The notes under the pieces were generated by a model, which made no database searches, was not told the origin of the DNA, and was given only the letters and a program-made list of their open reading frames with translations. A stretch of DNA of 64,000 bases, from the IMG/VR virus record IMGVR_UViG_3300027816_000051, positions 224,261-288,260 of that record. One strand, given 5' to 3'. Shown piece after piece: positions 408-21,118 of the stretch (the stretch's first letter is position 1; each line of letters starts with the position of its first letter). The translations under genes were made by a program, and so were the position numbers.

Positions 408-427
408 TTCTTTTACTTTTTAATTGT

Positions 428-1475: not shown

Positions 1476-1477
1476 AG

Positions 1478-1756
1478 TTAATCCCAAATTTGAGTGATAG
1501 TACCTTCAAACGGATTGTACTCAACTTGTTTTCCCATAACCCAATCACCTTGCTCAACTTTGAGTGGTTTGTGTTCGTTTGAGAAACTTCCATCGGGTTG
1601 TTCGTGTCTTAATACACTATCCTTTCTAACTTCAACTTCTGCGAAATCTGTTTGTGTTTCATCAACAATGAAATCACCATACAGAGTGTGCTGGTTAACA
1701 CCCTCACCCTTTAAGAGTGTGTGTTTTTTCTTCGGAGTTACTTTCTTGTTTTTCAT
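1478..1756 (-). CDS. Small conserved phage protein (GE..H / HE...EH / Q.EY family)
   Basis: LKGEGVNQH...LRHE...EHKPL...KQVEYNP...WD; first gene after promoter 1777-1784. Confidence 0.65.
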   Translation of the reverse strand: MKNKKVTPKKKHTLLKGEGVNQHTLYGDFIVDETQTDFAEVEVRKDSVLRHEQPDGSFSNEHKPLKVEQGDWVMGKQVEYNPFEGTITQIWD

Positions 1757-1859
1757 TTTTAGATTGTTTTATGGTACAAATATAAATCTATTTTTTGTAT
1801 AAGTGAATTTTTTTTTTATTTTTTTCGCCAAACAAAAATCACCCGTGAAGGTGATTTCG

Positions 1860-2081
1860 TCATTCGTTTCGTACAATATCTAATAGGTCATTCACAATTT
1901 CTTTTTTGGTTAATGAAAGAAGTTGATTACCTCTGAACGACAACAACTTAAAGGTATTCATTCCTTTAATACCTTTTTCACCCTCTACATAGTAATCCAT
2001 TTTCCACTTACCCAAATACTTAACATTCCCTATGTGTTTTACATAGTAGACATTACCGATAGTTAGTTTTTCTAAAACCAT
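1860..2081 (-). CDS. Hypothetical protein
   Basis: Start moved to ATG 2081 (MVLEKL), downstream of promoter 2100-2107; terminator follows. Confidence 0.7.
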   Translation of the reverse strand: MVLEKLTIGNVYYVKHIGNVKYLGKWKMDYYVEGEKGIKGMNTFKLLSFRGNQLLSLTKKEIVNDLLDIVRNE

Positions 2082-2203
2082 ATAAATTAATTTAGAACAC
2101 AAATATAAATCTATATTTTGTATAATCCAAATTTATTTTTATATTTCTTGCCAAACAAAAGTTATCCTGTGCTGCATCATCACCATCTTGGATACTTATT
2201 ATT

Positions 2204-2335
2204 ATGATAGAAGGGATACTTTATACATTAGGAGTTGAGTTCGTATTAGTCATTATATTGTTTTGTTATGAGTTAAGAAGACAACTAAAAGAAGATTATC
2301 AAGAGAAACCATTTAGATTCTGGGAAGATACATGA
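2204..2335 (+). CDS. 43-aa single-TM membrane peptide
   Basis: MIEGILYTLGVEFVLVIILFCYELRRQLKEDYQEKPFRFWEDT*; preceded by ATACTTATT, similar to RTATTTAT. Confidence 0.5.
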   Translation: MIEGILYTLGVEFVLVIILFCYELRRQLKEDYQEKPFRFWEDT

Positions 2336-2516
2336 ACATCTCCTGGTTGCGCGCAGCCCTCGATTTTGGTTGGCTCGAACCCAAAGTATTGATTTTATTG
2401 GGTTTAGAGTTTGCCAAACAATTTTCACTGTTTGCGCGTAGCTCACCATCAACTTTGGAGCAATAAAAAACCCCACATTTCTGTGGGGTTCTTATTAATT
2501 GAGTACCTAACCAATC

Positions 2517-3371
2517 TTAAACCAACTCAACCAATTCTTTGAAAATTTGACGTTCCCTTTGTCCATAGGTTCCAAACATCTTGTTTTCAGAGTTATCACC
2601 TTTACTTAAGGAATGTGTGGTGTACTTAGTAACCCCACTGAACAATCCCCAAAGGTTATCACCTTTCTCTTTTACTTCACCATTAAGGTCTACGTAGAAA
2701 CGAGAAAGACGATTACGAGTCACGGTCGACACATCTTTGTCACTATTCAAATCAACATCTTTCATGATATTGAACAATGTACGTGTAACCCAATCCTCTT
2801 GTTTCTTGGTCATCTTCGTTTCAGAAAGTTTCTTAATGTCTTCGAACATTTCTTTTTCTTCCACGAGTACCCCCTCCAAACCACGACAGATATCATCGAT
2901 TCTCATCTCCATGTTTTTGGTGTGACGAATTTTCGCATTCAAGTTACGGAACGCTGCGAAGAATGAATTCTGACAACTGATTGTAATATTACTTGGACCG
3001 AATGCCAAACTAGTTGACCCATCGAAGGAATTCACACCAGTGATGAAACCCTCAACTCTGTCATTGCCCAATTTCAAATCATTTGATTTCAATTGAAGGT
3101 ATACTTTCTCACCCCCACCAAAGTAACCACCTTTGTGAATTGGTAAACCAACCTGTTGAGATACCTTGTCTAGTAAATCAACCATCTGATGATTTTGATA
3201 AGGAAAGTAACCATCACCATGTACAGACAAAACAGTGTTTGTGTCCTCACGGATGATTGCTTTACTCTTAGGAACAATGATACCACTTTCTGTAGTGATA
3301 CTTTCTTCTCTTACGGTCCAATTTAGGCCGACTTTGTTGAGAACTTGCTGTGTGCGATTTTCTTGTGACAT
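2517..3371 (-). CDS. DUF932 (phage/plasmid-like TIGR03299-type) protein
   Basis: GLNWTV, Y.PYQN, NSFDGS, ISCQN, IRHTKN, NLWGLFSGVTKYTTH motifs; start moved to 3371. Confidence 0.85.
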   Translation of the reverse strand: MSQENRTQQVLNKVGLNWTVREESITTESGIIVPKSKAIIREDTNTVLSVHGDGYFPYQNHQMVDLLDKVSQQVGLPIHKGGYFGGGEKVYLQLKSNDLKLGNDRVEGFITGVNSFDGSTSLAFGPSNITISCQNSFFAAFRNLNAKIRHTKNMEMRIDDICRGLEGVLVEEKEMFEDIKKLSETKMTKKQEDWVTRTLFNIMKDVDLNSDKDVSTVTRNRLSRFYVDLNGEVKEKGDNLWGLFSGVTKYTTHSLSKGDNSENKMFGTYGQRERQIFKELVELV

Positions 3372-3633
3372 ATGGATGTTTTTTAATTTGATACAAATGT
3401 AATACACTTTTCATTATAATCCAAATAAATCTTTATTTTTTTTTTCTGACCCCAGAATTCACCGTACCATCTCAGAAATTGGTTGGCATCTGTCATACAC
3501 CCGCCAAACTAAATTGAACACGGGATTTGCCGGCGACGAATTTTTTTAGCAAACAAAAAACCCCCACATTTCTGTGAGGGTTCCTTAACCAAATAAAACT
3601 AATCTATGAACGACAAATCAAGTGTATTACACT

Positions 3634-3774
3634 TTAACCAAATATAGGAATTAAAACAAACATTGTCAATAGGAAAAACATAAGTATTACAATGCCACCC
3701 AAAATTCCATCCCAAAATTCCTTTCGGTCTTCTTGGTAAACTTCTTTGAAAGTTGAAAACATTTCCTTTAACAT
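3634..3774 (-). CDS. 46-aa membrane peptide
   Basis: MLKEMFS...GILGGIVILMFFLLTMFVLIPIFG; starts right after the upstream stop. Confidence 0.6.
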   Translation of the reverse strand: MLKEMFSTFKEVYQEDRKEFWDGILGGIVILMFFLLTMFVLIPIFG

Positions 3775-3775
3775 A

Positions 3776-4135
3776 TCAATAATTGTTTTGATTATCGTAG
3801 TTGTCTCGGTAAACTCTTTTACGAGGTTGGTTGGTTCGTTGACCATTCCAATGGCGGTCTCCATTACCACCATTTTCGTAGTATGAGTTATTAATCATTT
3901 CATCAACCGATGGAACTTCAAAGTCCATATCACAACTTCCATTCATCATCTTCCACTGAATTTCATAAATGGTTTTAATGTCTTCTTCAACATTGACATA
4001 TGTACCATCTATGTATTCAATCTTCGTTGCTATCTTGTCGTTTCTTTTATCCAAGATACTAAAAATGTTTTTGACATTTTGTAGATTGACAAGTGTTGGG
4101 GTTCCTTTACCTTGATAAGTGAGTTTAATTAACAT
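3776..4135 (-). CDS. Hypothetical protein, weak FlbD-like N-terminus
   Basis: MLIKLT...LVN...TKIEYIDGTYVNVEEDIKTI; own promoter 4159-4166. Confidence 0.6.
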   Translation of the reverse strand: MLIKLTYQGKGTPTLVNLQNVKNIFSILDKRNDKIATKIEYIDGTYVNVEEDIKTIYEIQWKMMNGSCDMDFEVPSVDEMINNSYYENGGNGDRHWNGQRTNQPRKRVYRDNYDNQNNY

Positions 4136-4228
4136 TTTTTGTTTTTTTAATTATTGGACAAATATACAAATGAATTTTTGGAATATACAAACGATTGTGC
4201 CAATCAAAATCGGCGGTTCACCATCTCC

Positions 4229-4474
4229 TCAGATATTTCCCGAAAAGACAAGAAAATTGTTGGGTGGTAAATAAGTGTCGGGAGTGTCAATGATTTCATA
4301 TTCATCTTCACCCTCAACTACACCAAGAGTCCTACCACTATCCCAACGGACATTGATAACACCATGACCAACATGATAAATTGTTCCCATTGAACCTTCC
4401 TCAACGGGGTTAGGGTCGTTCTCCATTGAAACGAGACGAATTCTTTTTCCGATTAATTTTTCGTTTATTTTCAT
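4229..4474 (-). CDS. DUF4314 domain protein
   Basis: GKRIRLVSMENDPNPVEEGSMGTI...VRWDSGRTLGVVEGED. Confidence 0.8.
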   Translation of the reverse strand: MKINEKLIGKRIRLVSMENDPNPVEEGSMGTIYHVGHGVINVRWDSGRTLGVVEGEDEYEIIDTPDTYLPPNNFLVFSGNI

Positions 4475-4549
4475 ATCTGTATTAGTTTATTAATACAAAT
4501 ATACAACTTATTTTATGATATCCAAATTTTTTTTAGGATATTTTGCCAA

Positions 4550-4855
4550 TCAAATTGATGTCAATCTGAATATTCGTTTGAACTCTTTTTCAATTCTTCT
4601 GAATCTTATTTCGTCTTTTTCTCTAACATAACGCGATATTGTTTTGTTAAATTGAAAGTTAGAACGAGTAAGAAGATAGATAAATTTTCTCCTCTCCACT
4701 TTGTGACCTTCAAAGTTGTATGCCCATTCAACATCAACCGAAATATAATTTTCAGTTTCAATGATGTCACACACTTTACCTTCTTTTTCCGATTTTTTTA
4801 GGTAGTTCATTACTTCCTCATCGGTATTCAATGATATGTCGTTATAGTTTTTCAT
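4550..4855 (-). CDS. Hypothetical protein, possibly leaderless mRNA
   Basis: ATG 4855 lies 5 nt from the -7 box at 4860-4867. Confidence 0.65.
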   Translation of the reverse strand: MKNYNDISLNTDEEVMNYLKKSEKEGKVCDIIETENYISVDVEWAYNFEGHKVERRKFIYLLTRSNFQFNKTISRYVREKDEIRFRRIEKEFKRIFRLTSI

Positions 4856-5090
4856 AATACAAATATACAATTCATTTTATGATATCCAAATTTATTTTAA
4901 AATATCCAATAACACCATCTACTGTTTCACCCGGCGTCGTAAAAATTTTGGTTGGCTGACCACATAAAACACTTAAATATAATAGGTTATCCGCCAAACA
5001 AAATCCCCACCAGGCGTGGGCTGGGCGAATTCTGGTATAAAAAAAAATCCCCGACTTTCGCCGAGGACTTTTCACCTAACCAAACAAAAT

Positions 5091-5498
5091 CTATTCGTAT
5101 TCTTCTGCGTACAATTCACCCGTGAGGTACATGTCGTAAGTTTTTACTTCACCCTCCAACACTTCGGTTACTTTGTCAATAAGACTTTGGGTAATTTTCT
5201 TTACTCCATATTCTTCACGGACTTTCTTCTTTGAAACAAAGTACCAACCAACTTGTCCACTATCCCAACGACAACTGAACGGACTTGTGTTCATTGTAAT
5301 TCCCGAGTGGTCGTACAAGTAAAGAGGTAAGATAACACAAACATCTTCTTCTTTGATGATTGCGTTTTTCATTTCTTCCCAACCATTGTAGTTATTGTGG
5401 TTGTAGTCGTGTTTGTCTCCAAGGTCGTAACGTCCGTGAAAACACACCATTTTTCCGAGGTTGTCCCAACTCCGTGGGTTGTCAAAATCTTGATACAT
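5091..5498 (-). CDS. Conserved phage/mobile-element hypothetical protein
   Basis: NPRSWDNLGKMVCFH...LPLYLYDHSGITM...WDSGQVGW; own promoter and terminator. Confidence 0.75.
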   Translation of the reverse strand: MYQDFDNPRSWDNLGKMVCFHGRYDLGDKHDYNHNNYNGWEEMKNAIIKEEDVCVILPLYLYDHSGITMNTSPFSCRWDSGQVGWYFVSKKKVREEYGVKKITQSLIDKVTEVLEGEVKTYDMYLTGELYAEEYE

Positions 5499-5539
5499 AG
5501 TCGTTATTATTTATTGGTTTATACAAATATATAACAATT

Positions 5540-5698
5540 TTATTCGTTTACCAAATCTTTTTTGCCAAACTTTATTCGTCTGTACGCCTTCGCCGAAGGT
5601 TTCGACTTCTGTAACATTTTCCTACGGACTATTTGTGCGACGTGTCTCACACTTAATCCATTAAGGGTTTCATTCTTCATAGTTAAATTCGGTTTCAT
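5540..5698 (-). CDS. Small basic protein
   Basis: Not in track; (MKPNLT)MKNETLNGLSVRHVAQIVRRKMLQKSKPSAKAYRRIKFGKKDLVNE*; alternative start 5680. Confidence 0.55.
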   Translation of the reverse strand: MKPNLTMKNETLNGLSVRHVAQIVRRKMLQKSKPSAKAYRRIKFGKKDLVNE

Positions 5699-5831
5699 CT
5701 TCTATTTCTTTAAGTTTTTGTTCAAACTCATTTCTCATTTCATCGGTATCAAAGATTGGTTGTTTAGTTTCATCATCAATGTAATAGTAAACACCGACTT
5801 TGATTTCCGTTGGGATTGATTTCTTACTCAT
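5670..5831 (-). CDS. 53-aa acidic protein
   Basis: Not in track; MSKKSIPTEIKVGVYYYIDDETKQPIFDTDEMRNEFEQKLKEIEDETEFNYEE*; promoter 5852-5859. Confidence 0.7.
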   Translation of the reverse strand: MSKKSIPTEIKVGVYYYIDDETKQPIFDTDEMRNEFEQKLKEIEDETEFNYEE

Positions 5832-6107
5832 AGTAATTATGTATTACGATACAAATATAAAACTATATTCAGTATAATCCAAATTTTTTTTCATACCTGT
5901 CGTCTCCATCCCACAAATTGTTTGGCGTGTTGTTTAATGTTTTGACCGAAAGATTAAACAAAACATATAGTGTAATACGCCTTTATTGAGTGTCATACAG
6001 TGCCAACCAAATTTAGGATACAGCACGTGCTGTGAGGTGAAACTAAAACGCAACAAAAAAGGGTAACATTTCTGCTACCCTTTTCCACCGCAACCGAGTT
6101 AAACCAA

Positions 6108-6656
6108 TTAAATCGACAAGTACAGGCGGTTGTGGTTGTATAGTGCGACTGGGTTTTCTTCCGCAATCTTACCATATTCCTTTTTAATGATTTCGTACAT
6201 TCTATCTTGTGGTTCGTTAATACACTCCGATAAAAGTTCACAAAAACCATAGTTACTTTCATCAACTACTTCTTGTTCGGTACCAGGTAAACCACAATAG
6301 TACGCTTCCCCTACTTCGGAAATAAACATTCCCGAATAAAAACCTTTCAACTTAAAGTGATTAACGAATTTGTCCGCGTTACACCAAATAAAAATTGAAT
6401 TGTCTTTTTCTTTTAATAGGTACACCATACTTTCATCAATGATGAAACCATTTGAACCAGGAAATTGTCCAACCGAGAACAATCCCATAGGTGCTCCGTG
6501 TCCACACATTATTACTCTGTCGTGGGCGTCGATAAGTTTTCTAACTTCTTCTTTTGTTACCCCACCCGTGATAATTGTCTTATTCGGTATAGGTTCGTAC
6601 ACAATATCTAAAAATTGTGTCGATTTGTCTTTTGGATGAATTACAAGTGTTTTCAT
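6108..6656 (-). CDS. Hypothetical protein with caspase/gingipain-like His-Gly...Cys motifs
   Basis: VIMCGHG and IFIWCNA; start moved to 6656. Confidence 0.55.
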   Translation of the reverse strand: MKTLVIHPKDKSTQFLDIVYEPIPNKTIITGGVTKEEVRKLIDAHDRVIMCGHGAPMGLFSVGQFPGSNGFIIDESMVYLLKEKDNSIFIWCNADKFVNHFKLKGFYSGMFISEVGEAYYCGLPGTEQEVVDESNYGFCELLSECINEPQDRMYEIIKKEYGKIAEENPVALYNHNRLYLSI

Positions 6657-6926
6657 TATTTTGTCGATTTTATGATACAAAGATATAACGAGTTTTTTAT
6701 TCTACCAAATTTATTTTTATTTTTCTTGCCAACTAACCAAATAGTAACTTACCATTCGGTAACATCTCAGAACCGCTGCGTCGGGAAAATTTTGGTTGGC
6801 GTTCTTACAATCTGTAAAGTAAAAACCTACTAATCTGTAAAGTGGATGCCAAACAATTTTCACCCTGAACCGTGACTCAGGACTTCAGGTCATAAAAAAA
6901 CCCCAACTTTCGTTGAGGTCTTGTCT

Positions 6927-7139
6927 TTACTCTTCTTCACTATCCCGAAAAATTTGAATCGCTTCGTTGAACAATTCATTCTGTAATTGAAATAGTGTAT
7001 ATCCACTCTTAATACATTCATCTACCCAATCATTATCACCTTCAAAAATTCCTTCCCAACTTCTATTCGGTGGTAAACCCATTTCGTTTTCGGTTTGAAT
7101 ATGTTGGTAAATTAAACCAACAACTTCTTGTCTTGTCAT
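6927..7139 (-). CDS. Hypothetical protein
   Basis: Start 7139 (MTRQEV) after promoter 7162-7169; flanked by direct repeats at 6848 and 7212. Confidence 0.7.
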   Translation of the reverse strand: MTRQEVVGLIYQHIQTENEMGLPPNRSWEGIFEGDNDWVDECIKSGYTLFQLQNELFNEAIQIFRDSEEE

Positions 7140-7292
7140 TTTAATTAGTTTTGGTGAAACACAAAGATAAAACATTTTTTCGTATAATCCAAATTTTTTT
7201 ATATCTTTCTTGCCAACCAATTTTCACCCTGAACCGTGACTCAAGTTCTTCAGGTCATAAAAAAACCCCCACCTTTCGGTGAGGGTTCGTTG

Positions 7293-7595
7293 TTAAAAAA
7301 CTTCGGGTTCAAACTCAATTTGTGGGATACCCAATAGTTCGTAATCATCAAATTCCCCCCAATCGGGTTCATTGAAATAACGAAAACGGACATCCATAGT
7401 TCCATCTTCGTTCCACCAAATACGGACTTGGGTTCGGTGGTCGGAAATAAAAAACCCTTCAAGTTGTTCCAACTTCTCAATTAGAGGTTGAACATCCGAA
7501 TCGTCAATAGTTACTTCTTCGTTATTAACGAGGAAATCATCAACACATTCACAATTACCATCGTAGTCGATAGAGAAATCAATGTACTTTTCCAT
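7293..7595 (-). CDS. Highly acidic hypothetical protein
   Basis: Own promoter and terminator; D/E-rich. Confidence 0.75.
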   Translation of the reverse strand: MEKYIDFSIDYDGNCECVDDFLVNNEEVTIDDSDVQPLIEKLEQLEGFFISDHRTQVRIWWNEDGTMDVRFRYFNEPDWGEFDDYELLGIPQIEFEPEVF

Positions 7596-7884
7596 TTTGT
7601 TTTTTTTGTTTTATTGGTTTAACAATACAAATATAAATCAAATTTTAATATACACAACATTTGAGTATATTTTTTTTTATCTATTTTGCCAAACTACCAC
7701 GAAACAGATGACCACCTGTCGTCAAATCCGAAAAATTGTTTGGCGTAGGTGTAATACAATGTATGATAGTGTCATACAACGCCAACCAAAATTCCGAGCT
7801 GCAACTGTGCAGCTCCACTGCACACATCCGAGCAAAAAAAATCCCCGACTTTCGCCGAGGACTTTCCACCTAACTAAACCAAAC

Positions 7885-8259
7885 CTAATATGAACCAAAC
7901 CTTTCTTTTAACGCCACGTCAAACGCGGACATAAATGTTACTTGTTCTTTGACTTCTTCAAGTGAAAGTTTGGTATCACCATTTTCACCCGTTTCATCAT
8001 CGTAACCCATTATCAACCCATTACCCGATAGAGGTTGTCGGTAATTTTTCAACTTGAAAAACTTTGTGTTTTCATCAACACTCATTATACCTTCTTCATC
8101 AACATACACATCGTTTTCGTTGTTGTAACTAACAATCTCAAAAATAGAACACTTTAAGTGTCCATAGATACTTGGTAACTGACTACCAGTTTCATCACGA
8201 ACAACTTCAACTTCGGAAATTGTTTTGTTTTCTACGTCGATTAAAATTCCTCTTGACAT
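7885..8259 (-). CDS. DUF3846 domain protein
   Basis: VYVDEEG...LSGNGLIMGYD..GE. Confidence 0.75.
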   Translation of the reverse strand: MSRGILIDVENKTISEVEVVRDETGSQLPSIYGHLKCSIFEIVSYNNENDVYVDEEGIMSVDENTKFFKLKNYRQPLSGNGLIMGYDDETGENGDTKLSLEEVKEQVTFMSAFDVALKERFGSY

Positions 8260-8354
8260 TTCTTTTTTGTTTTATTGGTTTAACGATACAAATATAATAC
8301 TATTTCTTTTATATTCCAAATCTTTTTTTGCCAATCAAATTCCAACATCTCCCG

Positions 8355-8570
8355 TCAGGAGGTCAGGTATTTCTTGTCTTTGACAAATTTGAGGTGTCTA
8401 CATTCCTCAATAGTCAATCCCACAAATTCGTTGGGAGTGAAACTGATTTCATCGGGATAGTAGTCGAACAAAAATTCTTCTTGTCCATTTTCCATTGTAA
8501 CCCACACTTGGGGCATCGGGTCGAACAAACTCTTTGGTTGTTCCGTAATACGAGATGAGATAACTTTCAT
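8355..8570 (-). CDS. Hypothetical protein
   Basis: LFDYYPDEISFTPNEFVGLT; promoter 8596-8603. Confidence 0.75.
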   Translation of the reverse strand: MKVISSRITEQPKSLFDPMPQVWVTMENGQEEFLFDYYPDEISFTPNEFVGLTIEECRHLKFVKDKKYLTS

Positions 8571-8838
8571 GATTTTGTCTATTGGTTTAACTATACAAAT
8601 ATAAAACTATTTTTCTTATATACCAAATTTATTTTTATTTTTCTCAGAACCGTCGTCCGTATCCAAAAATTGGTTGGCGTAGGTGTAATACGATACTCAC
8701 TATTTGTCATACGGCGCCAAACAATTTTCCTTCAGGGCCCTGACTCAAGTCCTGAAATGTTCACCTTATCAATAAGGGAAACAAATAAAAAACCCCCACC
8801 ATTACTGATGAGGGTTAGTCTGAACCAACAAACTAAAT

Positions 8839-9243
8839 TCAATTTAAACAAAGATTTTTCATAAGGTCGGAAACTTGGTAAGGTTTATAAAAATCAAAAA
8901 CCTCTTGATGTTTTTCATCGGTTACAAAATTGTGGAACTCAACATTCAAAACGCCCTTGTCAAAGGTTGTTTCAACACTACACAAAATTTCGTGTCCATC
9001 CCTTTCAATGATTTGTGGAACAACTCGGTCGTACACCATTCTACCGATTGGGTCGTTTGGTACTGGTCCACCACCAACACCATACTCGGTTTCCCCTTCT
9101 TCGTTTACTTTTTTCAAAAGGTACATTTTTACATTGGGTACACTATCGTTTGTTCCCAACATTTCTTCGGTACTCACTTTTGCGGAGTGTGTCATTCCTT
9201 GAATAAAATCTCTGATTTCTTCAATGTCTTTGTAATTGTTCAT
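8839..9243 (-). CDS. Hypothetical protein
   Basis: Start moved to 9243 (MNNYKD); promoter 9273-9280. Confidence 0.7.
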   Translation of the reverse strand: MNNYKDIEEIRDFIQGMTHSAKVSTEEMLGTNDSVPNVKMYLLKKVNEEGETEYGVGGGPVPNDPIGRMVYDRVVPQIIERDGHEILCSVETTFDKGVLNVEFHNFVTDEKHQEVFDFYKPYQVSDLMKNLCLN

Positions 9244-9513
9244 ACTTGTTCTTTTTATTTGGTTTAACAATACGAATATAATATGATTAAACGGATATTC
9301 CAAATAAATTTATATTTTTTTTGCCAACTTACGATACAAGATGTCGAGGGACAGAAGACGGATTTTGATTTTTGGTTGGCGAGCGTAATACGATAATACC
9401 AATGTGTAATACCCCGCCAAACAATTTTCTACGCTGCTCAAATCCACCACAGAACCTCGTGTAAATAAAAAACCCCCAACTTTCGTTGAGGGTTAATTAC
9501 CATTTTGGAATTT

Positions 9514-9720
9514 TTAGAACCTTTGAGGTTGTGGTTTCTTTTTACTCTTGATGTAATTTTTGATGTCCTCAAACAAAATGATAAAGAACATACCAATACC
9601 CATACAAGAAAATAAGAACATACCCATTTGATTGTCTACGGGAATATCCCAAGTTAATGATACCCACATTGAGTAAACAATGAACCCGATGATTGCGATG
9701 TAAGGAAATAACTTTTTCAT
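9514..9720 (-). CDS. Small 2-TM membrane protein
   Basis: Two hydrophobic segments, basic C-tail; own promoter and terminator. Confidence 0.75.
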   Translation of the reverse strand: MKKLFPYIAIIGFIVYSMWVSLTWDIPVDNQMGMFLFSCMGIGMFFIILFEDIKNYIKSKKKPQPQRF

Positions 9721-9818
9721 AATTGTTTCTTTTGTTTGGTTTAACGATACAAATATAATATAAGTTTCAATATAAACAACATTTTTTTATATCTATTTTG
9801 CCAACTTGATAACACCAA

Positions 9819-10016
9819 CAACTTCTCCTTCGAGCAACAGCGCATGGTTGGAAATTAGATTGGCGGTTTTAGCAACACCTAAAGCATTTAGCAACTTCTC
9901 CTTCGAGCAATTGCGCATGAGGGAAATTAGATTGGCGGTTTTAGCAACACCTAAAGCATTTAGCAACTTCTCCTTCGAGCAATTGCGCATGAGGGAAATT
10001 AGATTGGCGGTTTTAG
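9819..10016. repeat. 72/73-bp tandem repeat, about 2.7 copies
   Basis: Units start at 9819, 9892, 9964 (caacttctccttcgagcaa...gaaattagattggcggttttag...); each carries a TTGGC box. Confidence 0.95.
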
Positions 10017-10219
10017 TCCGTGTCGGCGCATTTGCAACAAACTCGCCAAACAATATCTAACAGCGCAGCCCGGGTGAAATTCTGTTCCCAAATTTTTTCT
10101 TACTTTTTTTATTCGTTCCCGCCAAACAACATTCCCGATGGTTCACGGGGTTCGGAAAATTTCACACACAAAAAAAGGGGATACTTTCGTACCCCCTTCG
10201 GTTTTTCTTTCGGTGTGTG

Positions 10220-10783
10220 TTACTCCTTTACAATTTCGTACCTATCTCCGTTTACCGAAATTTCAAGTACATTGTCAAGGTCGGGTGTTATCGGTTTAAC
10301 CTCTCTATCCAAACCTTGTTTTTCGTTACTACTCTTTCTATCACTTATCCACTTTTCAAACAATGTTTTGTCTATTGAGTTACCACGAAATTCGTACTCC
10401 GTTGTTCCTTTGATTTCGGGAAACCACTCTACCATAAGGTAGGTTTTTGTTTCGGTGTCGGTGTCAGTCAGTAATGATTTACTGATATGTTTTTTACCCG
10501 TTGGACTTTCAACCTTAAAGGTGTTCGGGTCTTTACCCTCTTTCATAAGGTTGTTGTGTACCCTCTTTTCGTAGTCAGTTACCAAACGATAAGTTTTAGA
10601 TGATACCTTAAAGATTTCCTTATAGTAAGGGTTTAATTCTTTGGTGTCCTTTGTCTTTTGTAAAACTTCTTTGTAAAGGGTTTTCATTTTTACCCCTACA
10701 AAAGTGTTAGGACTTTTTTCCTCAATCTCTTTGATGATACTGATGATTTCGGACTTCGTTACTTTTTTGATTTCTTTGTTCAT
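10220..10783 (-). CDS. Lys-rich hypothetical protein
   Basis: Start moved to 10783 (MNKEIK); promoter 10814-10821. Confidence 0.75.
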   Translation of the reverse strand: MNKEIKKVTKSEIISIIKEIEEKSPNTFVGVKMKTLYKEVLQKTKDTKELNPYYKEIFKVSSKTYRLVTDYEKRVHNNLMKEGKDPNTFKVESPTGKKHISKSLLTDTDTETKTYLMVEWFPEIKGTTEYEFRGNSIDKTLFEKWISDRKSSNEKQGLDREVKPITPDLDNVLEISVNGDRYEIVKE

Positions 10784-11044
10784 ACTTTTATTTTTTAGTT
10801 TGTTAGGAATACACAAATATAAAACACTATTTCATATAAACAAAACTTTTTTTTATTTATTTCGCCAGACTACCACGAACCCGATGACCACCTGTCGTCC
10901 GTATCCGAAAATTGGTTGGCGAGTCGGTGCAATTATGGTCTATTCGCCAATCAAATTTCCACCTGAACCATCTCCTCAAGTTCACACAAATCTTCTTGGA
11001 CAAAAAAAATCCCCACCTTTCGGTGAGGACTTTCGGTGTGGTGT

Positions 11045-11302
11045 TTAATCTTCTTCACCCTCTTCAATTCCCGACATTACAACTTCGGTCAAGTGATTAA
11101 CAAAGGTTTCGTACAACTTGTAATCCAACATAACCTTTTGTCTTGTGTGTACAAGGGTTACGTTCTTTTCGTTTTTTTCATCGTACAACTCATTTGTTAG
11201 GTCATTCGTGAAATCAGTACCATTCCACTCGTAGTCAATTTGGTTTGACAATAACTGGTCAATTTTACTTTTAACCAAGTTTTTAACTTTTTGTGTGTCC
11301 AT
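11045..11302 (-). CDS. Hypothetical protein
   Basis: Start 11302 (MDTQKV); promoter 11328-11335. Confidence 0.7.
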   Translation of the reverse strand: MDTQKVKNLVKSKIDQLLSNQIDYEWNGTDFTNDLTNELYDEKNEKNVTLVHTRQKVMLDYKLYETFVNHLTEVVMSGIEEGEED

Positions 11303-11409
11303 ATTTTTATTAATTGGTTTGTGGGTACAAAGATATAACAATTTTAAAATAATACAAGTGAAAGTTATTCACATCCTGAATGTGGATTTTGACCACCCTG
11401 AACCTGACG

Positions 11410-11680
11410 ACCCCCATCCCACAAATTGTTTGGCATACCCCCTATACCTACCCCCTCCCCTCAAACCATACCCCCCTCCCTCCCGTATCCCCCCTTAATA
11501 TAGGGTATTTTGGGTGTCTGTAGAGGGGGGACAATACCTTAACAGAAATTTTTCCGGAAAAAATCTGAAAAATCGGAAAGTACCCCCTTTTCTGAAAAAA
11601 AAATTTTGGGAAAAAATCTAAAAATCTGAAAAAAGGTCAAAAACCGTTTCTGGAATTTCCGGAAAATTTTTCAAAAAATT
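11410..11680. other. Non-coding boundary: C-tracts (G-quadruplex potential on minus), palindromes and phased A-tracts
   Basis: Seven C-runs in 11438-11494; TTTTTCCGGAAAAA at 11549-11562 and TTTCCGGAAA at 11656-11665; A-tracts at 11558, 11568, 11611, 11620, 11629, 11639. Confidence 0.8.
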
Positions 11681-11710
11681 TGGAATATTCAAAAAGATAT
11701 CATAACTTCG
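11679..11710 (+). promoter_or_regulatory. Bacteroidota-type promoter
   Basis: TTTG (11679)-N20-TAACTTCG (11703). Confidence 0.6.
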
Positions 11711-11732
11711 TATCAACATAAGAAAAGAAGTC

Positions 11733-12350
11733 ATGAAAAAAGTTTTTTATTTATTACCACTCGTGGTATTCGTCACAATCGGAGCGGTCCTTTCATTTAC
11801 CACCGAGGGTCAAACAATCGTTCAACAGATAAAACCAAATAAGGTTATCTACATACAACCAATGGGTGATGTGAAACAAGAGTATTTGGAATTGGTAGAA
11901 AAGACCGTGGAATCTTTTTATGGTTTTGAATGTATTGTAAATCCTAAGGACCCTTTAACCAATAATCTTTTGGCCGAAAGTAAAACAAGGTATTCTGCCA
12001 ATAAGATACTAAGACAATATAGAGGGAAAGATAACTATCTAATTTTAACCGAGAAGGATATTGCAACACCAAGTCGTGGATATCCTGAATGGGGTGTGTT
12101 AGGATTGGGTTACAGACCTGGTAGTGTATGTGTGGTATCAACGTTCAGAATGAAACGTAATGTTAGTGTGGATGTAATTAAGGAGAGAATAAAAAAAGTG
12201 TCCATACATGAAGTTGGACACAATTTAGGTTTGGACCACTGTACAAATCATCCTGAATGTTTAATGAATGATGCCAATGGTACAATCAAACAAGTTGATA
12301 GAGAAAAGATGTGGTTGTGTGATAGATGTAAACAGATTATTGGTATGTAA
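11733..12350 (+). CDS. Archaemetzincin-like Zn metalloprotease (M54) with N-terminal signal/anchor
   Basis: HEVGHNLGLDHC...CLM...LCDRC; hydrophobic N-terminus. Confidence 0.85.
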   Translation: MKKVFYLLPLVVFVTIGAVLSFTTEGQTIVQQIKPNKVIYIQPMGDVKQEYLELVEKTVESFYGFECIVNPKDPLTNNLLAESKTRYSANKILRQYRGKDNYLILTEKDIATPSRGYPEWGVLGLGYRPGSVCVVSTFRMKRNVSVDVIKERIKKVSIHEVGHNLGLDHCTNHPECLMNDANGTIKQVDREKMWLCDRCKQIIGM

Positions 12351-12352
12351 CC

Positions 12353-13936
12353 TTAGGTTGATACCATCTGAATTTTATATGTCCTTGCAATCTGTTCGTA
12401 ATTGTTCTTATTGATATTTTTAAAGACCGACCTCTTATATACAACTTTGTTGGTTTGACTATCTCGGATTGGTCCTTGGAAATTCCAAACAATTAAATCT
12501 TTTTTAGTGGTTGGGTCTTCTATGGTCATACCAACTTCTCCGTCTATATAACTAAGACCTTTAACACGGAATTGCATTACCATATCATCCTCAACATTTG
12601 CTTCGGCTTTAAAGTTTGATAGTACATTGGATAATACCTTTTTGATAGATTCACTAATAATACTTTCAGCCATGGTTGAAGTTTCATCATTTCCACTCAA
12701 TTGTTGGGCTAACATCATAGGACTTTTACAAACTTCACCATCACCACCCAATTGTTCGAAATATGTTGGTGCGTTTTGAACGAGATAACTTGTTCCTTTA
12801 TCACCCATTGCAAATACTCTTGCACCTTTGGCTAATTTTTGAACCCTTGGGTCTTCAATGAATTTAGCGGGAACCCCAACACATCCATAACTTTGATTCG
12901 CATTTGCGATTAATTTAATTGAGTTCAAATATTCTTTTGGTACCTTACCCGCAGATAAGTCGGCTTTTAATACGTTTCTTAAATCTTCACTGGCTGTTAG
13001 TCTCCCTTCAATATTGGGAATACCGTGAATCGCGGCAGCCATTTGTTTACCCCCTTGGTCTTTCAAATTGAATACATTTTTACCTTTACCAGTATATCCC
13101 GTATTACTACCTAAACTTGATATGTTATAAATGCCCTTTGCTAAAAAACGTTCTTTGTAGTGGTCAACAACAAAATAAGCAGCATCGGCTATACATATTT
13201 TTGATGACTCATCCCATCTTCTTCTTGAGTCTTTTACACAGGATTCTTTTGTTGTAAAATTACTTGCGGTACAAAGACGAGGAGACGCTTCTAATTTTTG
13301 ACCTTTTGCGTCATCACCGGGTACCGGACTATTTTTACACCAATCCGCGTGAGTATAACTTTTACTATCTGATATTGATTTTTGTTCATTAGCACCATCA
13401 ACAACTTGGGTGTGAAGTACGTATTTACTACCTGTATCAAAAAGATATATCAAATTGTACTTTGGGTCGTAAACGAAAAACGGTTTGTCGTTTAATTTTC
13501 TTTTTTCAATGTATGTTAATTCAGCATCGATTCTTGGGGTATAGTTATATTTTGTACCTACAGTTTCGGATTTCTTTTCCAATTCTGATTTTTGTTTAGC
13601 AACTGGATTTACAACAATTGGTTTGGTTTGTAGATTGTCTTGATATCCAGCATAACCTCCTTGTTGACCAAGTCTACCCGTATTTAAACCCGTAAATTTC
13701 TTCACAGGTTCCACCGGTTTTGTTGAACCGAATACTTTTGTTTTGATTGCTTCTTTTCCCGTACCGGTGGCTAATCTATATGTTTTTTGGTTTTTTAATT
13801 TATAATAGTAGTTGTCACCATCTTTCATGTAATCGTACTTACCATCATAATTGGTGACATAGGTTTTCTGTTCGTTGATAACTGATTCGACAATATTAAC
13901 TAAATCCGACTCAGTGAGTCTTATTACTTTTCCCAT
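12353..13936 (-). CDS. Putative virion protein with YkuD/L,D-transpeptidase-like domain
   Basis: Leader VIRLTESDL; AIHG...SYGCVGV His/Cys motif. Confidence 0.55.
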   Translation of the reverse strand: MGKVIRLTESDLVNIVESVINEQKTYVTNYDGKYDYMKDGDNYYYKLKNQKTYRLATGTGKEAIKTKVFGSTKPVEPVKKFTGLNTGRLGQQGGYAGYQDNLQTKPIVVNPVAKQKSELEKKSETVGTKYNYTPRIDAELTYIEKRKLNDKPFFVYDPKYNLIYLFDTGSKYVLHTQVVDGANEQKSISDSKSYTHADWCKNSPVPGDDAKGQKLEASPRLCTASNFTTKESCVKDSRRRWDESSKICIADAAYFVVDHYKERFLAKGIYNISSLGSNTGYTGKGKNVFNLKDQGGKQMAAAIHGIPNIEGRLTASEDLRNVLKADLSAGKVPKEYLNSIKLIANANQSYGCVGVPAKFIEDPRVQKLAKGARVFAMGDKGTSYLVQNAPTYFEQLGGDGEVCKSPMMLAQQLSGNDETSTMAESIISESIKKVLSNVLSNFKAEANVEDDMVMQFRVKGLSYIDGEVGMTIEDPTTKKDLIVWNFQGPIRDSQTNKVVYKRSVFKNINKNNYEQIARTYKIQMVST

Positions 13937-18553: not shown

Positions 18554-19095
18554 TATTTTACCAATATCATAAAATTATAGGTCTTATCACTGTAATTCTG
18601 TGAGAAAAAAACACCAACCGTTTTTGAAGACGGATTTGTTAAATCGGAAAACAAATCAGAATCTAACGACATAACATCTAATAGATAATCACAAAACTTT
18701 AATTCTTTATTTTCAAAGTGCGCAACATACCCATACTCACTGAACAATCCGTATGTTCCCCATGTAAATCCTTGAGATAAAGGTAAACCATTTAAATTGG
18801 ATACTGTGAGATAATCACTAATATCACAACTGAAGGTCACCTCATTTACACCGTTTTCACTTCTTAAGTTATTAATTGACGTTAGAACACTTTGAATAAC
18901 TAATTGTTGGTTGAGACCATATTCGGTGATTGGGGATGTCTTATCTTCTTGTAAAGGTATAATCTTAATCGACCAATCACCGTTATCCACATATGTAATA
19001 ATATCTGATTTAAATCTTTTCTGAATATCAGAAGTTTGACCAAAAGAGTTTAGTACCATTACCAAACTAACACACAAAACAACTACATTTTTCAT
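18553..19095 (-). CDS. Secreted protein, degenerate CAP/SCP-like domain
   Basis: Signal peptide ending SFG-Q; INNLRSENG; host-type promoter 19118-19148. Confidence 0.6.
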   Translation of the reverse strand: MKNVVVLCVSLVMVLNSFGQTSDIQKRFKSDIITYVDNGDWSIKIIPLQEDKTSPITEYGLNQQLVIQSVLTSINNLRSENGVNEVTFSCDISDYLTVSNLNGLPLSQGFTWGTYGLFSEYGYVAHFENKELKFCDYLLDVMSLDSDLFSDLTNPSSKTVGVFFSQNYSDKTYNFMILVK

Positions 19096-19231
19096 AACTT
19101 TTGTTTTAATATTTGAACAAAGTTATATATATTTTTAATATATCCAAATTTTTTTTGAAATATTTTTAAAAAAAAATAATCATGGGTGTCTAATATATTT
19201 CTTGATATTTATATTATAAAGAAGAAAATTC

Positions 19232-20554: not shown

Positions 20555-20995
20555 TTATAAACCGGCTTCCCAAGTTATAAGATGGTCATCTTGGGGTAAA
20601 GAAACTTTCACAGAGTCCTGTCCAATAAATTTAATGTAACCATTTAACTTATCACCGATAATTTGAATGGTTATGGTATTCATGTCGTCATTTTTGTAGT
20701 ATTGTGAAACTTTATAACCACGACATTCACCTTTTAGGTTCATAACAATCACGGAATCTGGTTTGATATCCATGGGTGTTTTACGTCTCACCAAAATACG
20801 GTCGGCATAAATCAATGGGTCAGTTATTCTTTCTTCAAGATTATCATCCTCCATTGGGGTTATCTTCAACCCATTCTTGATTTCAACCAACTTAATTGGA
20901 TAAATCAAATCCACCGATGAATCGGTTTCGTTTTCTTGTCCAAACAATACCACTGAAGACAAGATGAAGACGGCGATTAATGATAATTTTTTCAT
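20555..20995 (-). CDS. Secreted hypothetical protein
   Basis: Signal peptide ending LFG-Q; host-type promoter 21018-21049. Confidence 0.75.
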   Translation of the reverse strand: MKKLSLIAVFILSSVVLFGQENETDSSVDLIYPIKLVEIKNGLKITPMEDDNLEERITDPLIYADRILVRRKTPMDIKPDSVIVMNLKGECRGYKVSQYYKNDDMNTITIQIIGDKLNGYIKFIGQDSVKVSLPQDDHLITWEAGL

Positions 20996-21118
20996 GACTT
21001 TAATTAATTTGTTGATTCAAAGGTATGGCGACTTTTAGAATATTCCAAATTTTTTTCAAATATTTTTAAAAAAAAATCGTAACTAATTCAAAATCAACTT
21101 ATTAAATTTGAAAATATT

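What the first reader, a model, noticed from the sequence alone, without database searches (positions are those of the whole stretch)
11400..11690. G-quadruplex-competent tract plus bent DNA where the box array ends: candidate genome end, pac site or origin
Seen: right after the last TTGGC (11430) come seven C-runs (minus strand G6,G3,G3,G6,G4,G5,G5 within 11438-11494), a G6 run at 11525 able to pair with them, two TTTCCGGAAA palindromes and A-tracts about 10 bp apart; transcription diverges here. Such GC tracts are exceptional in this AT-rich window. Inference: a terminus or packaging/entry signal, which would place the early cassettes at the first-entering end.
Basis: partly seen in the sequence, partly recalled or inferred. 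Interest (0 to 1): 0.65.

Follow-up and report, generated by a model that had tools for sequence, protein, structure and literature searches.

The report
Conserved G-rich control element, jumbo phage
The G/C-run tract is real and is the core of a single-copy, non-coding signal that a whole family of uncultured freshwater jumbo phages keeps almost unchanged at the head of their early-gene block; it is not a genome end, and its most likely job (about 30%) is to start replication, the main alternative being control of early transcription or DNA entry.

Summary
The window is the last 64 kb of a 288-kb IMG/VR jumbo myophage from lake water. The tract is its only canonical G-quadruplex motif, and the two TTTCCGGAAA palindromes occur nowhere else in the genome. 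The A-tract phasing ranks first of 1,277 windows.

The tract is not private to this phage. A roughly 150-nt bipartite element (palindrome, C6, a 26-30-nt spacer with a TATA-like box, then the invariant GGGGGGATACGGGAGGG) recurs once per genome. It appears in about 24 viral contigs of 16-357 kb and about 25 metagenome contigs. In 13 of the 16 loci with enough flank, the G-rich strand is the sense strand of the next downstream gene. It keeps 86% identity with a relative whose DNA is otherwise diverged.

It lies inside every large contig, including a closed 357-kb assembly. A physical terminus is therefore unsupported. Contig breaks near it fall at different offsets and co-occur with strain variants.

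No RNA structure, Rfam match or GC-skew turn was found. Perfect DnaA boxes follow the element in 13 of 38 relatives; the window has only degenerate ones. In two relatives homing-endonuclease genes were inserted exactly between the TATA-like box and the G-run, and they carry a spare copy of the upstream half.

Best reading: a transcription-primed (R-loop/G4) origin, confidence 0.3. Rivals: an early-transcription or entry switch, or a pac site.

The parts
11303..11732 (.). Divergent non-coding control region, 430 nt, the fifth largest gap between called ORFs in the 288-kb genome
   Evidence: It is 100% identical in three other assemblies of the same phage, apart from one base at about 11723.
11328..11358 (-). 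Promoter of the first early cassette gene (11045-11302). The -7 box TATCTTTG is at 11328-11335. A TTG-type -33 element lies 19 nt upstream; its coordinates (about 11355-11358) are estimated by eye.
   Evidence: Custom TAnnTTTG scan. It belongs to the same promoter family as 10-12 other cassettes (families D1 and D2).
11365..11389 (.). Degenerate inverted pair of DnaA-box-like 9-mers: TTATTCACA (11365-11373, one mismatch, fits the relaxed form TTWTNCACA) and TGTGGATTT (11381-11389, two mismatches)
   Evidence: Relatives carry perfect TGTGGATAA boxes at the homologous place, +60 to +190 from the G6 run.
11414..11434 (+). Last copy of the cassette box CCATCCCACAAATTGTTTGGC. Unlike the other copies, no closing GCCAA partner follows.
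   Evidence: family D12, 100% identical to the copy at 5906-5926.
11438..11494 (-). G-run tract (C-runs on the plus strand), G-quadruplex- and i-motif-capable. The family-invariant core GGGGGGATACGGGAGGG occupies 11478-11494 on the minus strand.
   Evidence: The core is invariant in 28 of 31 aligned relatives, with small changes in the other three. A canonical PQS is kept in 30 of 38 versions.
11495..11524 (-). Variable spacer. It carries a TATA-like box (minus strand TATATT, 11497-11502) and a weak -35-like TCTACA 16 nt upstream.
   Evidence: Relatives have CTATATAA directly before the G6 run. The assembly variants in run X1 differ here.
11525..11535 (-). C6 run on the G-rich strand (G6 on the plus strand) with the conserved ATTG(T/A) in front of it. 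It forms an inverted repeat with the first G6 of the tract (11489-11494).
   Evidence: The C6:G6 pairing is kept in 31 of 31 aligned relatives, but it never varies, so there is no covariation.
11542..11567 (.). Site S1: a 25-bp imperfect palindrome, CAGAAATTTTTCCGGAAAAAATCTG. It contains the conserved 22-mer TTTTTTCYGGAAAAATTTCWGT (minus strand).
   Evidence: The exact 22-mer was found in 31 viral stretches.
11595..11619 (.). Site S2: a degenerate copy (TTTTGGGAAAAAATC), 52-53 bp from both S1 and S3
   Evidence: nhmmer finds a local second match of the upstream half of the model. Relatives have TTCTGGAAAATTTTT about 54 nt upstream of S1.
11647..11669 (.). Site S3: the second TTTCCGGAAA palindrome (11656-11665), just upstream of the rightward promoter
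11545..11700 (.). Phased A-tract (intrinsically bent, AT-rich) region that embeds S1 to S3
   Evidence: rank 1 of 1,277 windows for both the 10-11-bp periodicity and the number of A5+ tracts.
11679..11732 (+). Rightward promoter (-33 TTTG at about 11679-11682, by eye; -7 TAACTTCG at 11703-11710) and 5' leader of the metzincin-like peptidase gene. A similar promoter-plus-leader stands before two other genes in the window.
   Evidence: Copies with 78-79% identity lie at window 19088-19166 and 20988-21066, both on the minus strand.

Best explanation
The tract is the core of a single-copy, roughly 300-nt cis-acting region that starts something once per genome. The most likely function is a replication origin of the transcription-primed (R-loop) kind.

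Reading the G-rich strand (window minus strand), the region has three parts:
(i) A bent, AT-rich stretch with three copies of a palindrome spaced five helical turns apart (S3, S2, S1). These are presumed binding sites for a dimeric protein and an easily melted zone.
(ii) A promoter-like unit, made of ATTG(T/A)CCCCCC, a 26-30-nt spacer and a TATA-like box.
(iii) Directly after the TATA-like box, the invariant GGGGGGATACGGGAGGG followed by more G-runs.

Inferred mechanism: transcription fired from (ii) runs leftwards, so the G-runs are on the non-template strand. The G-rich RNA stays paired with the C-rich template. The displaced G-strand can fold into a quadruplex that locks the R-loop open. 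The RNA 3' end or the opened strand is then used to load the replication machinery. In about a third of relatives host DnaA may help, through the DnaA boxes 60-190 nt downstream.

Shown here: the anatomy, the single-copy status, the conservation, the fixed orientation relative to the downstream genes, and the internal position in contigs.

Inferred, not shown: promoter activity, R-loop or G4 formation, and priming.
For: 1. Strong, sequence-specific conservation of a non-coding, single-copy element.
- It is 86-95% identical in relatives whose neighbouring 527-aa protein is only 60-76% identical; it is also 86% identical in G001, a relative whose DNA is otherwise diverged.
- It is one of only nine segments with at least 84% identity between G000 and G001; three of the others are tRNA genes.
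- There is one copy each in G000 and G001, and one copy of the 22-mer in each of three further large genomes.

2. Origin-like anatomy.
- Phased A-tracts and AT-rich DNA.
- Three palindromic sites 52-53 bp apart, whose core palindrome occurs nowhere else in the genome.
- An adjacent GC block.
- DnaA boxes enriched 39-fold at +50 to +200 in relatives, 3.3 per kb against 0.085 per kb. The window has a degenerate pair at the homologous place.

3. The G-runs are on the sense strand of the next downstream ORF in 13 of the 16 loci with enough flank. This is the orientation that favours R-loops.

4. The upstream half behaves as a portable promoter unit. In G003 and L014 two HNH endonuclease genes sit exactly between the TATA-like box and the G6 run. 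A second copy of the upstream half restores the contiguous unit in front of the G-tract. L069 has a similar lone copy in front of a gene.

5. It is not an RNA gene. There is no Rfam hit and no covariation, and folding z-scores are -0.01 and +1.16. It is not coding either, because indels among relatives break every frame.

ColE1-type origins also have a DnaA box just downstream.
Against: - There is no replication-linked skew signal. The cumulative GC skew simply follows gene direction, and the third-codon skew corrected for orientation shows no turn at 235.7 kb.
- No initiator, primase or polymerase gene lies next to the element. The DNA polymerase is at G000 54-57 kb and the helicases at about 59 and 193 kb.
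- The window itself has no perfect DnaA box, and only 13 of 38 relatives have one near the element.
- The same boxes recur at later cassettes in those relatives. They may therefore belong to the early-promoter array and not to an origin.
- The promoter-like unit matches neither the phage's Bacteroidota-type early promoters (TAnnTTTG) nor its ATATTTATAG class. Promoter activity is unproven.
- Eight of 38 versions lack a canonical quadruplex motif, and the loops are as conserved as the G-runs. Selection is therefore on the sequence, not simply on G4 potential.
Confidence: 0.3

Rival explanations
1. Master switch or entry-control site for the early block. The three palindromes and the invariant G-rich core are bound by a host or virion-delivered protein. 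That protein turns the first early promoter and the divergent rightward promoter on or off, or it pauses DNA entry at the inner border of the early region, like the T5 injection stop signal.
For: - The element lies between two divergent promoters and directly upstream (about -100 to -330) of the first early promoter.
- It heads the block of small genes that each have their own promoter and terminator. This holds in the window, G001, G006, L011 and most other loci with enough flank.
- In relatives the DnaA boxes abut the -33 element of the first early promoter, for example in L131 and L075.
- The T5 iss is likewise an untranslated, repeat- and palindrome-rich, bent region with DnaA boxes beside the pre-early genes. 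It is far better conserved than the neighbouring coding DNA (preprint 10.1101/866236).
Against: - The palindrome and the G-core occur only once per genome, whereas the roughly 25 other early cassettes do without them.
- No long terminal repeat or nearby genome end has been shown.
- Homologues of the T5 genes A1 and A2 were not looked for.
- In L014 and G003 the element sits between two genes of the same direction, not at the divergence point.
Confidence: 0.25
2. pac site: the place where the small terminase binds (bent A-tract DNA with repeated sites) and the first headful cut is made. Packaging would run leftwards into the early block.
For: - It is a single-copy, conserved, bent region with repeats. 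From my own knowledge, known pac sites such as SPP1 pacL and P1 pac have a similar look.
- In run X1, Logan contig depth is 44 left of the element and 22 right of it.
- The large relatives assemble as circular permutations, as headful phages do.
Against: - The large terminase and portal genes are at G000 23.7-27.4 kb, at least 75 kb away.
- The depth step coincides with several variant contigs at 50.6x, 14.7x and 20.5x. Strains that share the left flank explain it.
- No read-start pile-up could be tested.
- pac specificity usually drifts with the small terminase, whereas here a 17-mer is invariant across very distant relatives (inference).
Confidence: 0.1
3. Fixed physical genome terminus (cos site, or the inner edge of a long terminal repeat) at the tract.
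For: - One viral contig (G002) stops at window 11532.
- About five metagenome or MAG contigs stop within 100 nt of the G6 run.
- There is a 2:1 depth step in X1.
Against: - The stops fall at different offsets and in the variable spacer. That is what a de Bruijn graph does where co-occurring strains share a conserved core.
- One of these contigs, L085, begins with an 18-nt run of G that looks like a sequencing artefact.
- About 24 viral contigs, eight of them 286-357 kb, read through. One is closed by a 127-bp overlap.
- Both ends of G001 lie in the tRNA array and join up on the G000 map.
Confidence: 0.03
4. A transcribed G-rich (or C-rich) small RNA or leader, whose sequence rather than fold is the functional part, for example pairing with a host or phage RNA.
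For: - Conservation is at tRNA level and extends to the loops as well as the G-runs.
- A TATA-like box directly precedes the invariant 17-mer.
- The upstream half drives genes elsewhere.
Against: - No Rfam family matches.
- There is no covariation and no thermodynamic signal.
- No terminator follows the tract before the next promoter.
- No expression data could be obtained.
Confidence: 0.1
5. The conservation is mainly a by-product of homing-endonuclease traffic. The site is a homing target and recombination anchor that gene conversion keeps uniform, without a function of its own beyond a promoter.
For: - Two HNH or endonuclease VII-like genes are inserted precisely inside the element in G003 and L014.
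- The gene content to the right of the element differs between relatives, so it is a mosaic boundary.
- Strain variants branch here.
Against: - Most relatives have no endonuclease gene nearby, yet they keep the element.
- A 40%-GC, 357-kb phage keeps both halves.
- Endonucleases choose conserved functional targets, so the insertion argues for function and not against it (inference).
Confidence: 0.1

Closest known systems
Transcription-primed (R-loop) origins: ColE1 RNA II origin, phage T4 oriF/oriG, mitochondrial LSP-CSBII (from my own knowledge)
   Same: A promoter-like unit is followed directly by a G-rich non-template tract. CSBII is also a G6-A-G7-type run. An AT-rich, easily melted flank is present. 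In relatives a DnaA box lies a short way downstream, as in ColE1-type plasmids.
   Different: No transcript, hybrid or priming has been shown. The promoter type is unknown. No skew signal was found. The tract starts at the presumed transcription start, not about 100-500 nt downstream of it. Three phased palindromes have no counterpart in those systems.
Phage T5 injection stop signal (iss) region (preprint 10.1101/866236)
   Same: Both are untranslated, bent, rich in repeats and palindromes, and associated with DnaA boxes. Both lie at the upstream border of a block of early genes, and both are far better conserved than the adjacent coding DNA.
   Different: T5 iss lies inside a 10-kb terminal repeat about 9.5 kb from the genome end and has eight ordered DnaA boxes. 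Here no terminal repeat or nearby end is seen. The window has no perfect box. The hallmark is a G/C-run core that T5 lacks. The phages are unrelated: a jumbo myophage of probable Bacteroidota hosts against a siphophage of E. coli.
Bacterial oriC basal unwinding module (DnaA boxes, GC-rich spacer with DnaA-trios, AT-rich unwinding element; from my own knowledge)
   Same: In the relatives that have boxes, the order of parts is DnaA boxes, then a GC-rich block, then an AT-rich region.
   Different: The boxes are 60-190 nt from the GC block, not adjacent to it. No DnaA-trio repeats are present. Boxes are absent or degenerate in most versions, including the window.
pac sites of headful phages (SPP1, P1; from my own knowledge)
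   Same: Single-copy, with bent A-tract DNA and repeated protein-binding sites.
   Different: It is far from the terminase genes. No cut site or read pile-up is known. Its conservation is much deeper than is usual for pac sites.

Membership tests
Canonical G-quadruplex motif (PQS) | Four or more G-runs of at least 3 with loops of 1-7 nt on one strand | tested here: met
   Minus strand 11471-11494 with loops of 7 or less; 11438-11494 with loops of 12 or less. It is the only such motif in 288 kb.
Canonical G-quadruplex motif (PQS) | The motif, not merely the sequence, is kept in relatives | tested here: inconclusive
   30 of 38 versions keep a canonical PQS. However, the loops are as invariant as the runs, and 8 versions replace the later G-runs with C-runs. 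The sample is also biased by the G-rich search pattern.
Canonical G-quadruplex motif (PQS) | Actual folding into a quadruplex or i-motif | not testable with these tools
   Needs CD or NMR spectroscopy, or chemical probing.
DnaA-dependent origin (oriC-like) | Cluster of consensus DnaA boxes TTATCCACA | tested here: not met
   The window has one box with one mismatch and one with two mismatches. Thirteen of 38 relatives have 1-3 perfect boxes at +50 to +200.
DnaA-dependent origin (oriC-like) | Adjacent AT-rich unwinding region | tested here: met
   11545-11700 is the most A-tract-rich segment of the window. This is a statement about composition only.
DnaA-dependent origin (oriC-like) | Strand-skew switch at the site | tested here: not met
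   Phages often lack such a signal, so this is weak evidence.
Transcription-primed (R-loop) origin | Promoter reading into a G-rich non-template stretch | tested here: inconclusive
   G-runs are on the sense strand of the next downstream ORF in 13 of 16 loci. A weak sigma-70-like TCTACA-16-TATATT sits directly upstream. The upstream half is duplicated in front of HNH genes. It matches neither of the phage's own promoter classes.
Transcription-primed (R-loop) origin | Persistent RNA:DNA hybrid used as a primer | not testable with these tools
   Needs hybrid mapping and replication-intermediate mapping.
Physical genome terminus (cos site or terminal-repeat edge) | Independent assemblies end at the same nucleotide | tested here: not met
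   About 24 viral contigs read through. The few that stop do so at different offsets.
Physical genome terminus (cos site or terminal-repeat edge) | Pile-up of read starts in virion DNA | not testable with these tools
   The three raw-read runs held no usable reads of the phage (2 partial reads in one run). Logan contigs cannot show ends.
pac site | Lies in or next to the terminase genes | tested here: not met
   The large terminase is at G000 23,722-25,497, whereas the element is at about 235,700. This feature is not obligatory for pac sites.
pac site | Coverage step with decay in the packaging direction | tested here: inconclusive
   Depth is 44 against 22 in X1, but strain variants are present and only 1.5 kb of left flank is covered.
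T5-type injection stop signal | Conserved untranslated repeat and palindrome region at the inner border of the pre-early genes | tested here: met
   compared.
T5-type injection stop signal | Location inside a long terminal repeat a few kb from the entering end | tested here: not met
   No long repeat was found. The element is single-copy, and the contigs behave as circular permutations.
T5-type injection stop signal | Ordered array of paired DnaA boxes | tested here: not met
   Relatives have 0-3 boxes and the window has none that is perfect.
Structured non-coding RNA | Match to a described family, or covariation-supported fold | tested here: not met
   Rfam gives no relevant hit. Only six invariant C:G pairs are predicted, with no compensatory change. 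Folding z-scores are -0.01 and +1.16.

The most novel reading that the evidence does not exclude
A family of freshwater jumbo phages initiates replication, or the very first step of infection, at a single conserved site where a dedicated promoter fires straight into an invariant G-run. An R-loop locked by a G-quadruplex would then serve as the start signal. This would be a phage counterpart of the mitochondrial LSP-CSBII primer switch, and the first conserved, functionally required G-quadruplex element described in a bacteriophage.
Probability: 0.2. Interest if true: 0.8.

Novelty: new variant of a known kind. Interest (0 to 1): 0.58.

Why it matters
Cis-acting sites (origins, packaging and entry signals) are almost unknown for uncultured jumbo phages. 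This element gives a sharply defined, alignable landmark: a 17-nt invariant core and a 22-nt palindrome arm. It occurs once per genome in phages found in 20 sequencing runs from 14 studies.

Practical uses:
- It can anchor genome comparisons across the family.
- It flags members of the family in metagenomes.
- It explains recurrent assembly breaks at this locus.
- It marks a homing-endonuclease target.

If the R-loop/G4 reading is right, it would be a rare case of a non-B-DNA structure under strong purifying selection in a virus of bacteria. It would be directly testable with oligonucleotides and with existing lake metatranscriptomes.

Tried and rejected
- DNA similarity search against 50,697 deposited phage genomes found nothing.
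- Rfam gave only chance-level hits.
- A tRNA scan of the window found none.
- Pfam and PHROGs left most neighbouring proteins unnamed. The exceptions are the M54-like peptidase, a peptidoglycan-binding domain, a tail-collar domain and the HNH endonucleases.
- Read laying: the three raw-read runs held essentially no reads of this phage, so no PhageTerm-like test was possible. The Logan contigs showed only strain variants and a depth step that cannot be interpreted.
- Cumulative GC skew and orientation-corrected third-codon skew show no feature at the tract.
- A T7-like RNA polymerase (PF00940) was not found, but the control genomes did not ring either, so the result is uninformative.
- The idea that CTATATAAGGGG is one of the phage's ordinary promoters was rejected. 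The two enriched upstream motifs are TAnnTTTG and ATATTTATAG, and the element has neither.
- DnaA boxes as proof of an origin: downgraded. In the relatives that have them, the boxes also recur at later cassettes.
- A host chromosomal counterpart of the 17-mer was not found. The 35 hits in 185,579 genomes are chance matches in GC-rich genomes, apart from two AT-rich phage-like contigs binned with Bacteroidota or Bacteroidia MAGs.
- A literature search for the core sequence found nothing.
- A paper on 'moraphages', freshwater Bacteroidota jumbo phages (PMC12619734), may concern related phages. Membership was not tested, and in the passages I searched it does not mention an origin of replication or this element.
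Full report
**What the window is.** The window is bases 224,261-288,260 of a 288,260-bp IMG/VR virus record. IMG/VR classes it as linear, and CheckV estimates it as 92% complete. It is a jumbo myophage. PHROG hits give:
- large terminase at G000 23.7 kb, portal at 25.5 kb and major head protein at 30.9 kb;
- DNA polymerase at 54 kb;
- tail sheath at 64.9 kb and a baseplate wedge protein;
- ribonucleotide reductase, thymidylate synthase and helicases.

The record starts inside an array of 23 tRNA genes. The same DNA is found almost unchanged in 20 public runs from 14 studies, mostly lake and freshwater metagenomes. Three signs point to a Bacteroidota host: promoter boxes of the Bacteroidota type (TTTG ... 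TAnnTTTG), the absence of Shine-Dalgarno sequences before start codons, and two phage-like contigs binned with Bacteroidota MAGs. This host assignment is inference.

**The observation.**
- The seven C-runs at 11438-11494 read G6,G3,G3,G6,G4,G5,G5 on the minus strand.
- The G6 run is at 11525.
- The two TTTCCGGAAA palindromes are at 11551 and 11656.
- The A-tracts are spaced about 10 bp apart.

The tract is the only canonical quadruplex motif in the 288 kb. One minimal motif would not be remarkable, since 0.47 are expected. Seven runs totalling 32 bases in 60 nt, however, was reached in none of 40 simulated genomes. The palindrome occurs nowhere else in the genome. The A-tract segment ranks first of 1,277 windows for both tract number and 10-11-bp periodicity. 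A degenerate third palindrome copy lies midway, so three sites are spaced 52-53 bp apart, about five helical turns.

**Setting.** The tract lies in a 430-nt gap (11303-11732) between diverging genes. This is the fifth largest gap between called ORFs in the genome.

To the left runs a block of about 25 kb (G000 210,185-235,562) of small leftward genes. Each has its own promoter and hairpin terminator. Between terminator and next promoter stand inverted copies of the box GAAAATTGTTTGGC. The copy at 11414-11434 is the last one, and it is followed by the tract instead of a partner box.

To the right lies a secreted metzincin-like peptidase gene (Pfam M54). Its promoter and leader resemble those of two other genes in the window.

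**The decisive result: conservation.** Three other IMG/VR contigs are the same phage. They carry the whole gap unchanged apart from one base, and in each the gap is internal.

More distant relatives were reached in two ways. The first was through homologues of the neighbouring 527-aa protein (used because Pfam and PHROGs left that protein open). The second was through exact-pattern scans. Relatives whose copy of that protein is only 76% and 60% identical keep the tract and about 90 nt upstream of it at roughly 95% identity. G001, a 310-kb relative, keeps 86% over 133 nt.

A 22-mer from the palindrome arm (TTTTTTCYGGAAAAATTTCWGT) hits 31 viral stretches, many on contigs of 167-357 kb. Roughly four in five of the distinct hits have GGGGGGATACGGGAGG about 69 nt downstream, although that part was not in the query. 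A 22-mer from the G-tract hits 27 metagenome contigs.

The consensus on the G-rich strand is:
- T-rich DNA with one or two TTCTGGAAAA sites;
- GATTTTTTCYGGAAAAATTTCWGT;
- GGYATTG(T/A)CCCCCC;
- a 26-30-nt variable spacer ending in CTATATAA;
- GGGGGGATACGGGAGGG(A)GGGGGG.

After that point the versions diverge. Some continue with G-runs and others switch to C-runs.

Between G000 and G001 only nine segments exceed 84% identity. Three of them are tRNA genes and one is this element. The element is single-copy in both genomes. Even a 357-kb phage with 40% GC keeps both halves, again in front of a long run of small genes.

In 10 of the 16 loci with enough flank, the element sits in a divergent gap. 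In 13 of those 16 the next downstream gene lies on the G-rich strand.

**What it is not.** It is not a structured RNA. There is no Rfam match. The only consensus pairing is the invariant C6:G6, with no compensatory change. Folding energies equal those of shuffled sequence.

It is not coding, because indels among relatives break every frame.

It is not a copy of a host sequence.

It is very unlikely to be a fixed genome end.
- About 24 viral contigs read through it. Eight of them are 286-357 kb, and one is closed by a 127-bp overlap.
- Both ends of G001 lie in the tRNA array and join up on the G000 map.
- One viral contig (G002) and about five small contigs do stop near the element, but at different offsets.
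- In run X1 the Logan contigs branch here into variant forms with different depths. This is what assemblers do where co-occurring strains share a conserved core and differ beside it.
- One of the contigs that stops here begins with an 18-nt run of G that looks like a sequencing artefact.

**Clues to function.** (a) DnaA boxes. Perfect TGTGGATAA boxes lie 60-190 nt downstream of the G6 run in 13 of 38 distinct versions. That is 3.3 per kb against 0.085 per kb elsewhere in the same loci. The window has only a degenerate inverted pair at the homologous place, 11365-11389. In those relatives the boxes recur at later cassettes, and they abut the -33 element of the first early promoter. They may therefore belong to early-promoter control as much as to an origin.

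(b) Homing endonucleases. In G003 and L014 two HNH or endonuclease VII-like genes are inserted exactly between the TATA-like box and the G6 run. The insert carries a second copy of the upstream half, so the contiguous unit is restored in front of the G-tract. The original upstream half now precedes the endonuclease genes. This suggests two things. The upstream half can act as a promoter unit, and its contiguity with the G-tract matters.

(c) The promoter-like unit. In the window it is a weak sigma-70-like TCTACA-16-TATATT. In relatives the spacing is ATTGACC-N27-TATATA. It matches neither of the phage's two enriched upstream motifs, TAnnTTTG and ATATTTATAG.

(d) Skew. There is no skew turn at the site.

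**Best explanation and rivals.** I commit, at about 0.3, to a replication origin of the transcription-primed kind. In this model a dedicated promoter fires into a G-rich non-template tract. The RNA stays hybridised to the C-rich template, and the displaced G-strand can fold into a quadruplex. The neighbouring bent AT-rich DNA, with its three phased palindromes, binds a protein and melts. DnaA helps in the relatives that have boxes. This fits the anatomy, the fixed strand orientation, the single copy and the depth of conservation. Its steps are inferred, not shown.

The main rival, at about 0.25, is a master switch or entry-control site for the early block. It is comparable to the T5 injection stop signal, which is also an untranslated, bent, palindrome-rich, DnaA-box-bearing and unusually conserved region beside the pre-early genes.

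The remaining readings are a pac site (0.1), a sequence-acting small RNA or leader (0.1), conservation driven mainly by homing traffic (0.1) and a fixed terminus (0.03).

**Novelty.** No Rfam family, deposited phage genome or searchable paper contains the element. A recent description of freshwater Bacteroidota jumbo phages does not mention an origin of replication or this element in the passages I searched. I did not test whether that lineage is the same one. In kind, the element is a phage cis-acting control region. Its invariant G-run core, its G4 capability and its breadth of conservation make it a new variant of that kind.

**Limits.**
- Gene calls are my own crude ORF picks.
- Promoter calls are pattern matches.
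- The sample of relatives is partly biased by the search patterns.
- No expression data or read-end data could be obtained.

Noticed in passing
window 9850-10065: Three head-to-tail copies of a 72-nt unit; the first two are identical. Each copy contains a TTGGCG half-box and two TTAGCAAC repeats. The array lies 1.4 kb left of the tract, inside the early block. It could be an iteron-like array or a repetitive small ORF.
   Followed up: no
window 1-11340 (G000 about 210,185-235,562): An early block of about 25 kb. Dozens of small leftward genes each have a Bacteroidota-type promoter (TTTG-N19-21-TAnnTTTG) and a hairpin terminator with a T-run. Inverted pairs of GAAAATTGTTTGGC bracket variable inserts that carry GTAATAC or GTCATAC repeats.
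   Followed up: partly
L034:2637-4101 (G003) and L014:6520-7984: Two adjacent HNH or endonuclease VII-like genes (318 and 172 aa) are inserted between the TATA-like box and the G6 run of the element. The upstream half of the element is duplicated. This looks like a free-standing homing-endonuclease cassette that targets the conserved site.
   Followed up: partly
window 11663-11740 (+), 19088-19166 (-), 20988-21066 (-): A shared promoter-plus-leader module (78-79% identical) stands in front of three unrelated genes, including the secreted M54-like metzincin at 11733-12350.
   Followed up: no
L044:1-5473 (G000 1-5,473): An array of 23 tRNA genes, all on the minus strand. The contig starts inside a tRNA-like sequence, and both ends of the related 310-kb contig G001 fall in the homologous array. 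The array is either a recurrent assembly break or a real junction.
   Followed up: partly
G000 107,949-124,367 (outside the window): A single 5,472-codon ORF made of many diverged internal repeats of about 1.5 kb. It is C-run-rich and produces the largest GC-skew excursion of the genome. Two other assemblies of the phage break inside it.
   Followed up: no
L054:2916-2986 (G000 202,916-202,986): A non-coding stretch of about 70 nt in a 515-nt gap, 85-89% identical to two places in G001. It is followed by a hairpin and T-run. There is no Rfam or tRNA match. It is a candidate small RNA.
   Followed up: partly
whole G000: The motif (G)ATATTTATA(G) is enriched about 13-fold in the 100 nt upstream of roughly 45 genes. 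It is probably the middle or late promoter class of this phage and is distinct from the early TAnnTTTG class.
   Followed up: no
window 12353-13936 (-): A 527-aa protein with no Pfam or PHROG match has 81 homologues. Many of them carry a peptidoglycan-binding domain (PF01471) and lie on 300-kb phage contigs. It is a probable cell-wall-acting protein, and a useful marker for this phage family.
   Followed up: partly
L085:1-40: A metagenome contig begins with an 18-nt run of G, followed by three imperfect repeats of the core (GGATACAGSAGG). It looks like a sequencing or assembly artefact seeded at the G-tract.
   Followed up: no
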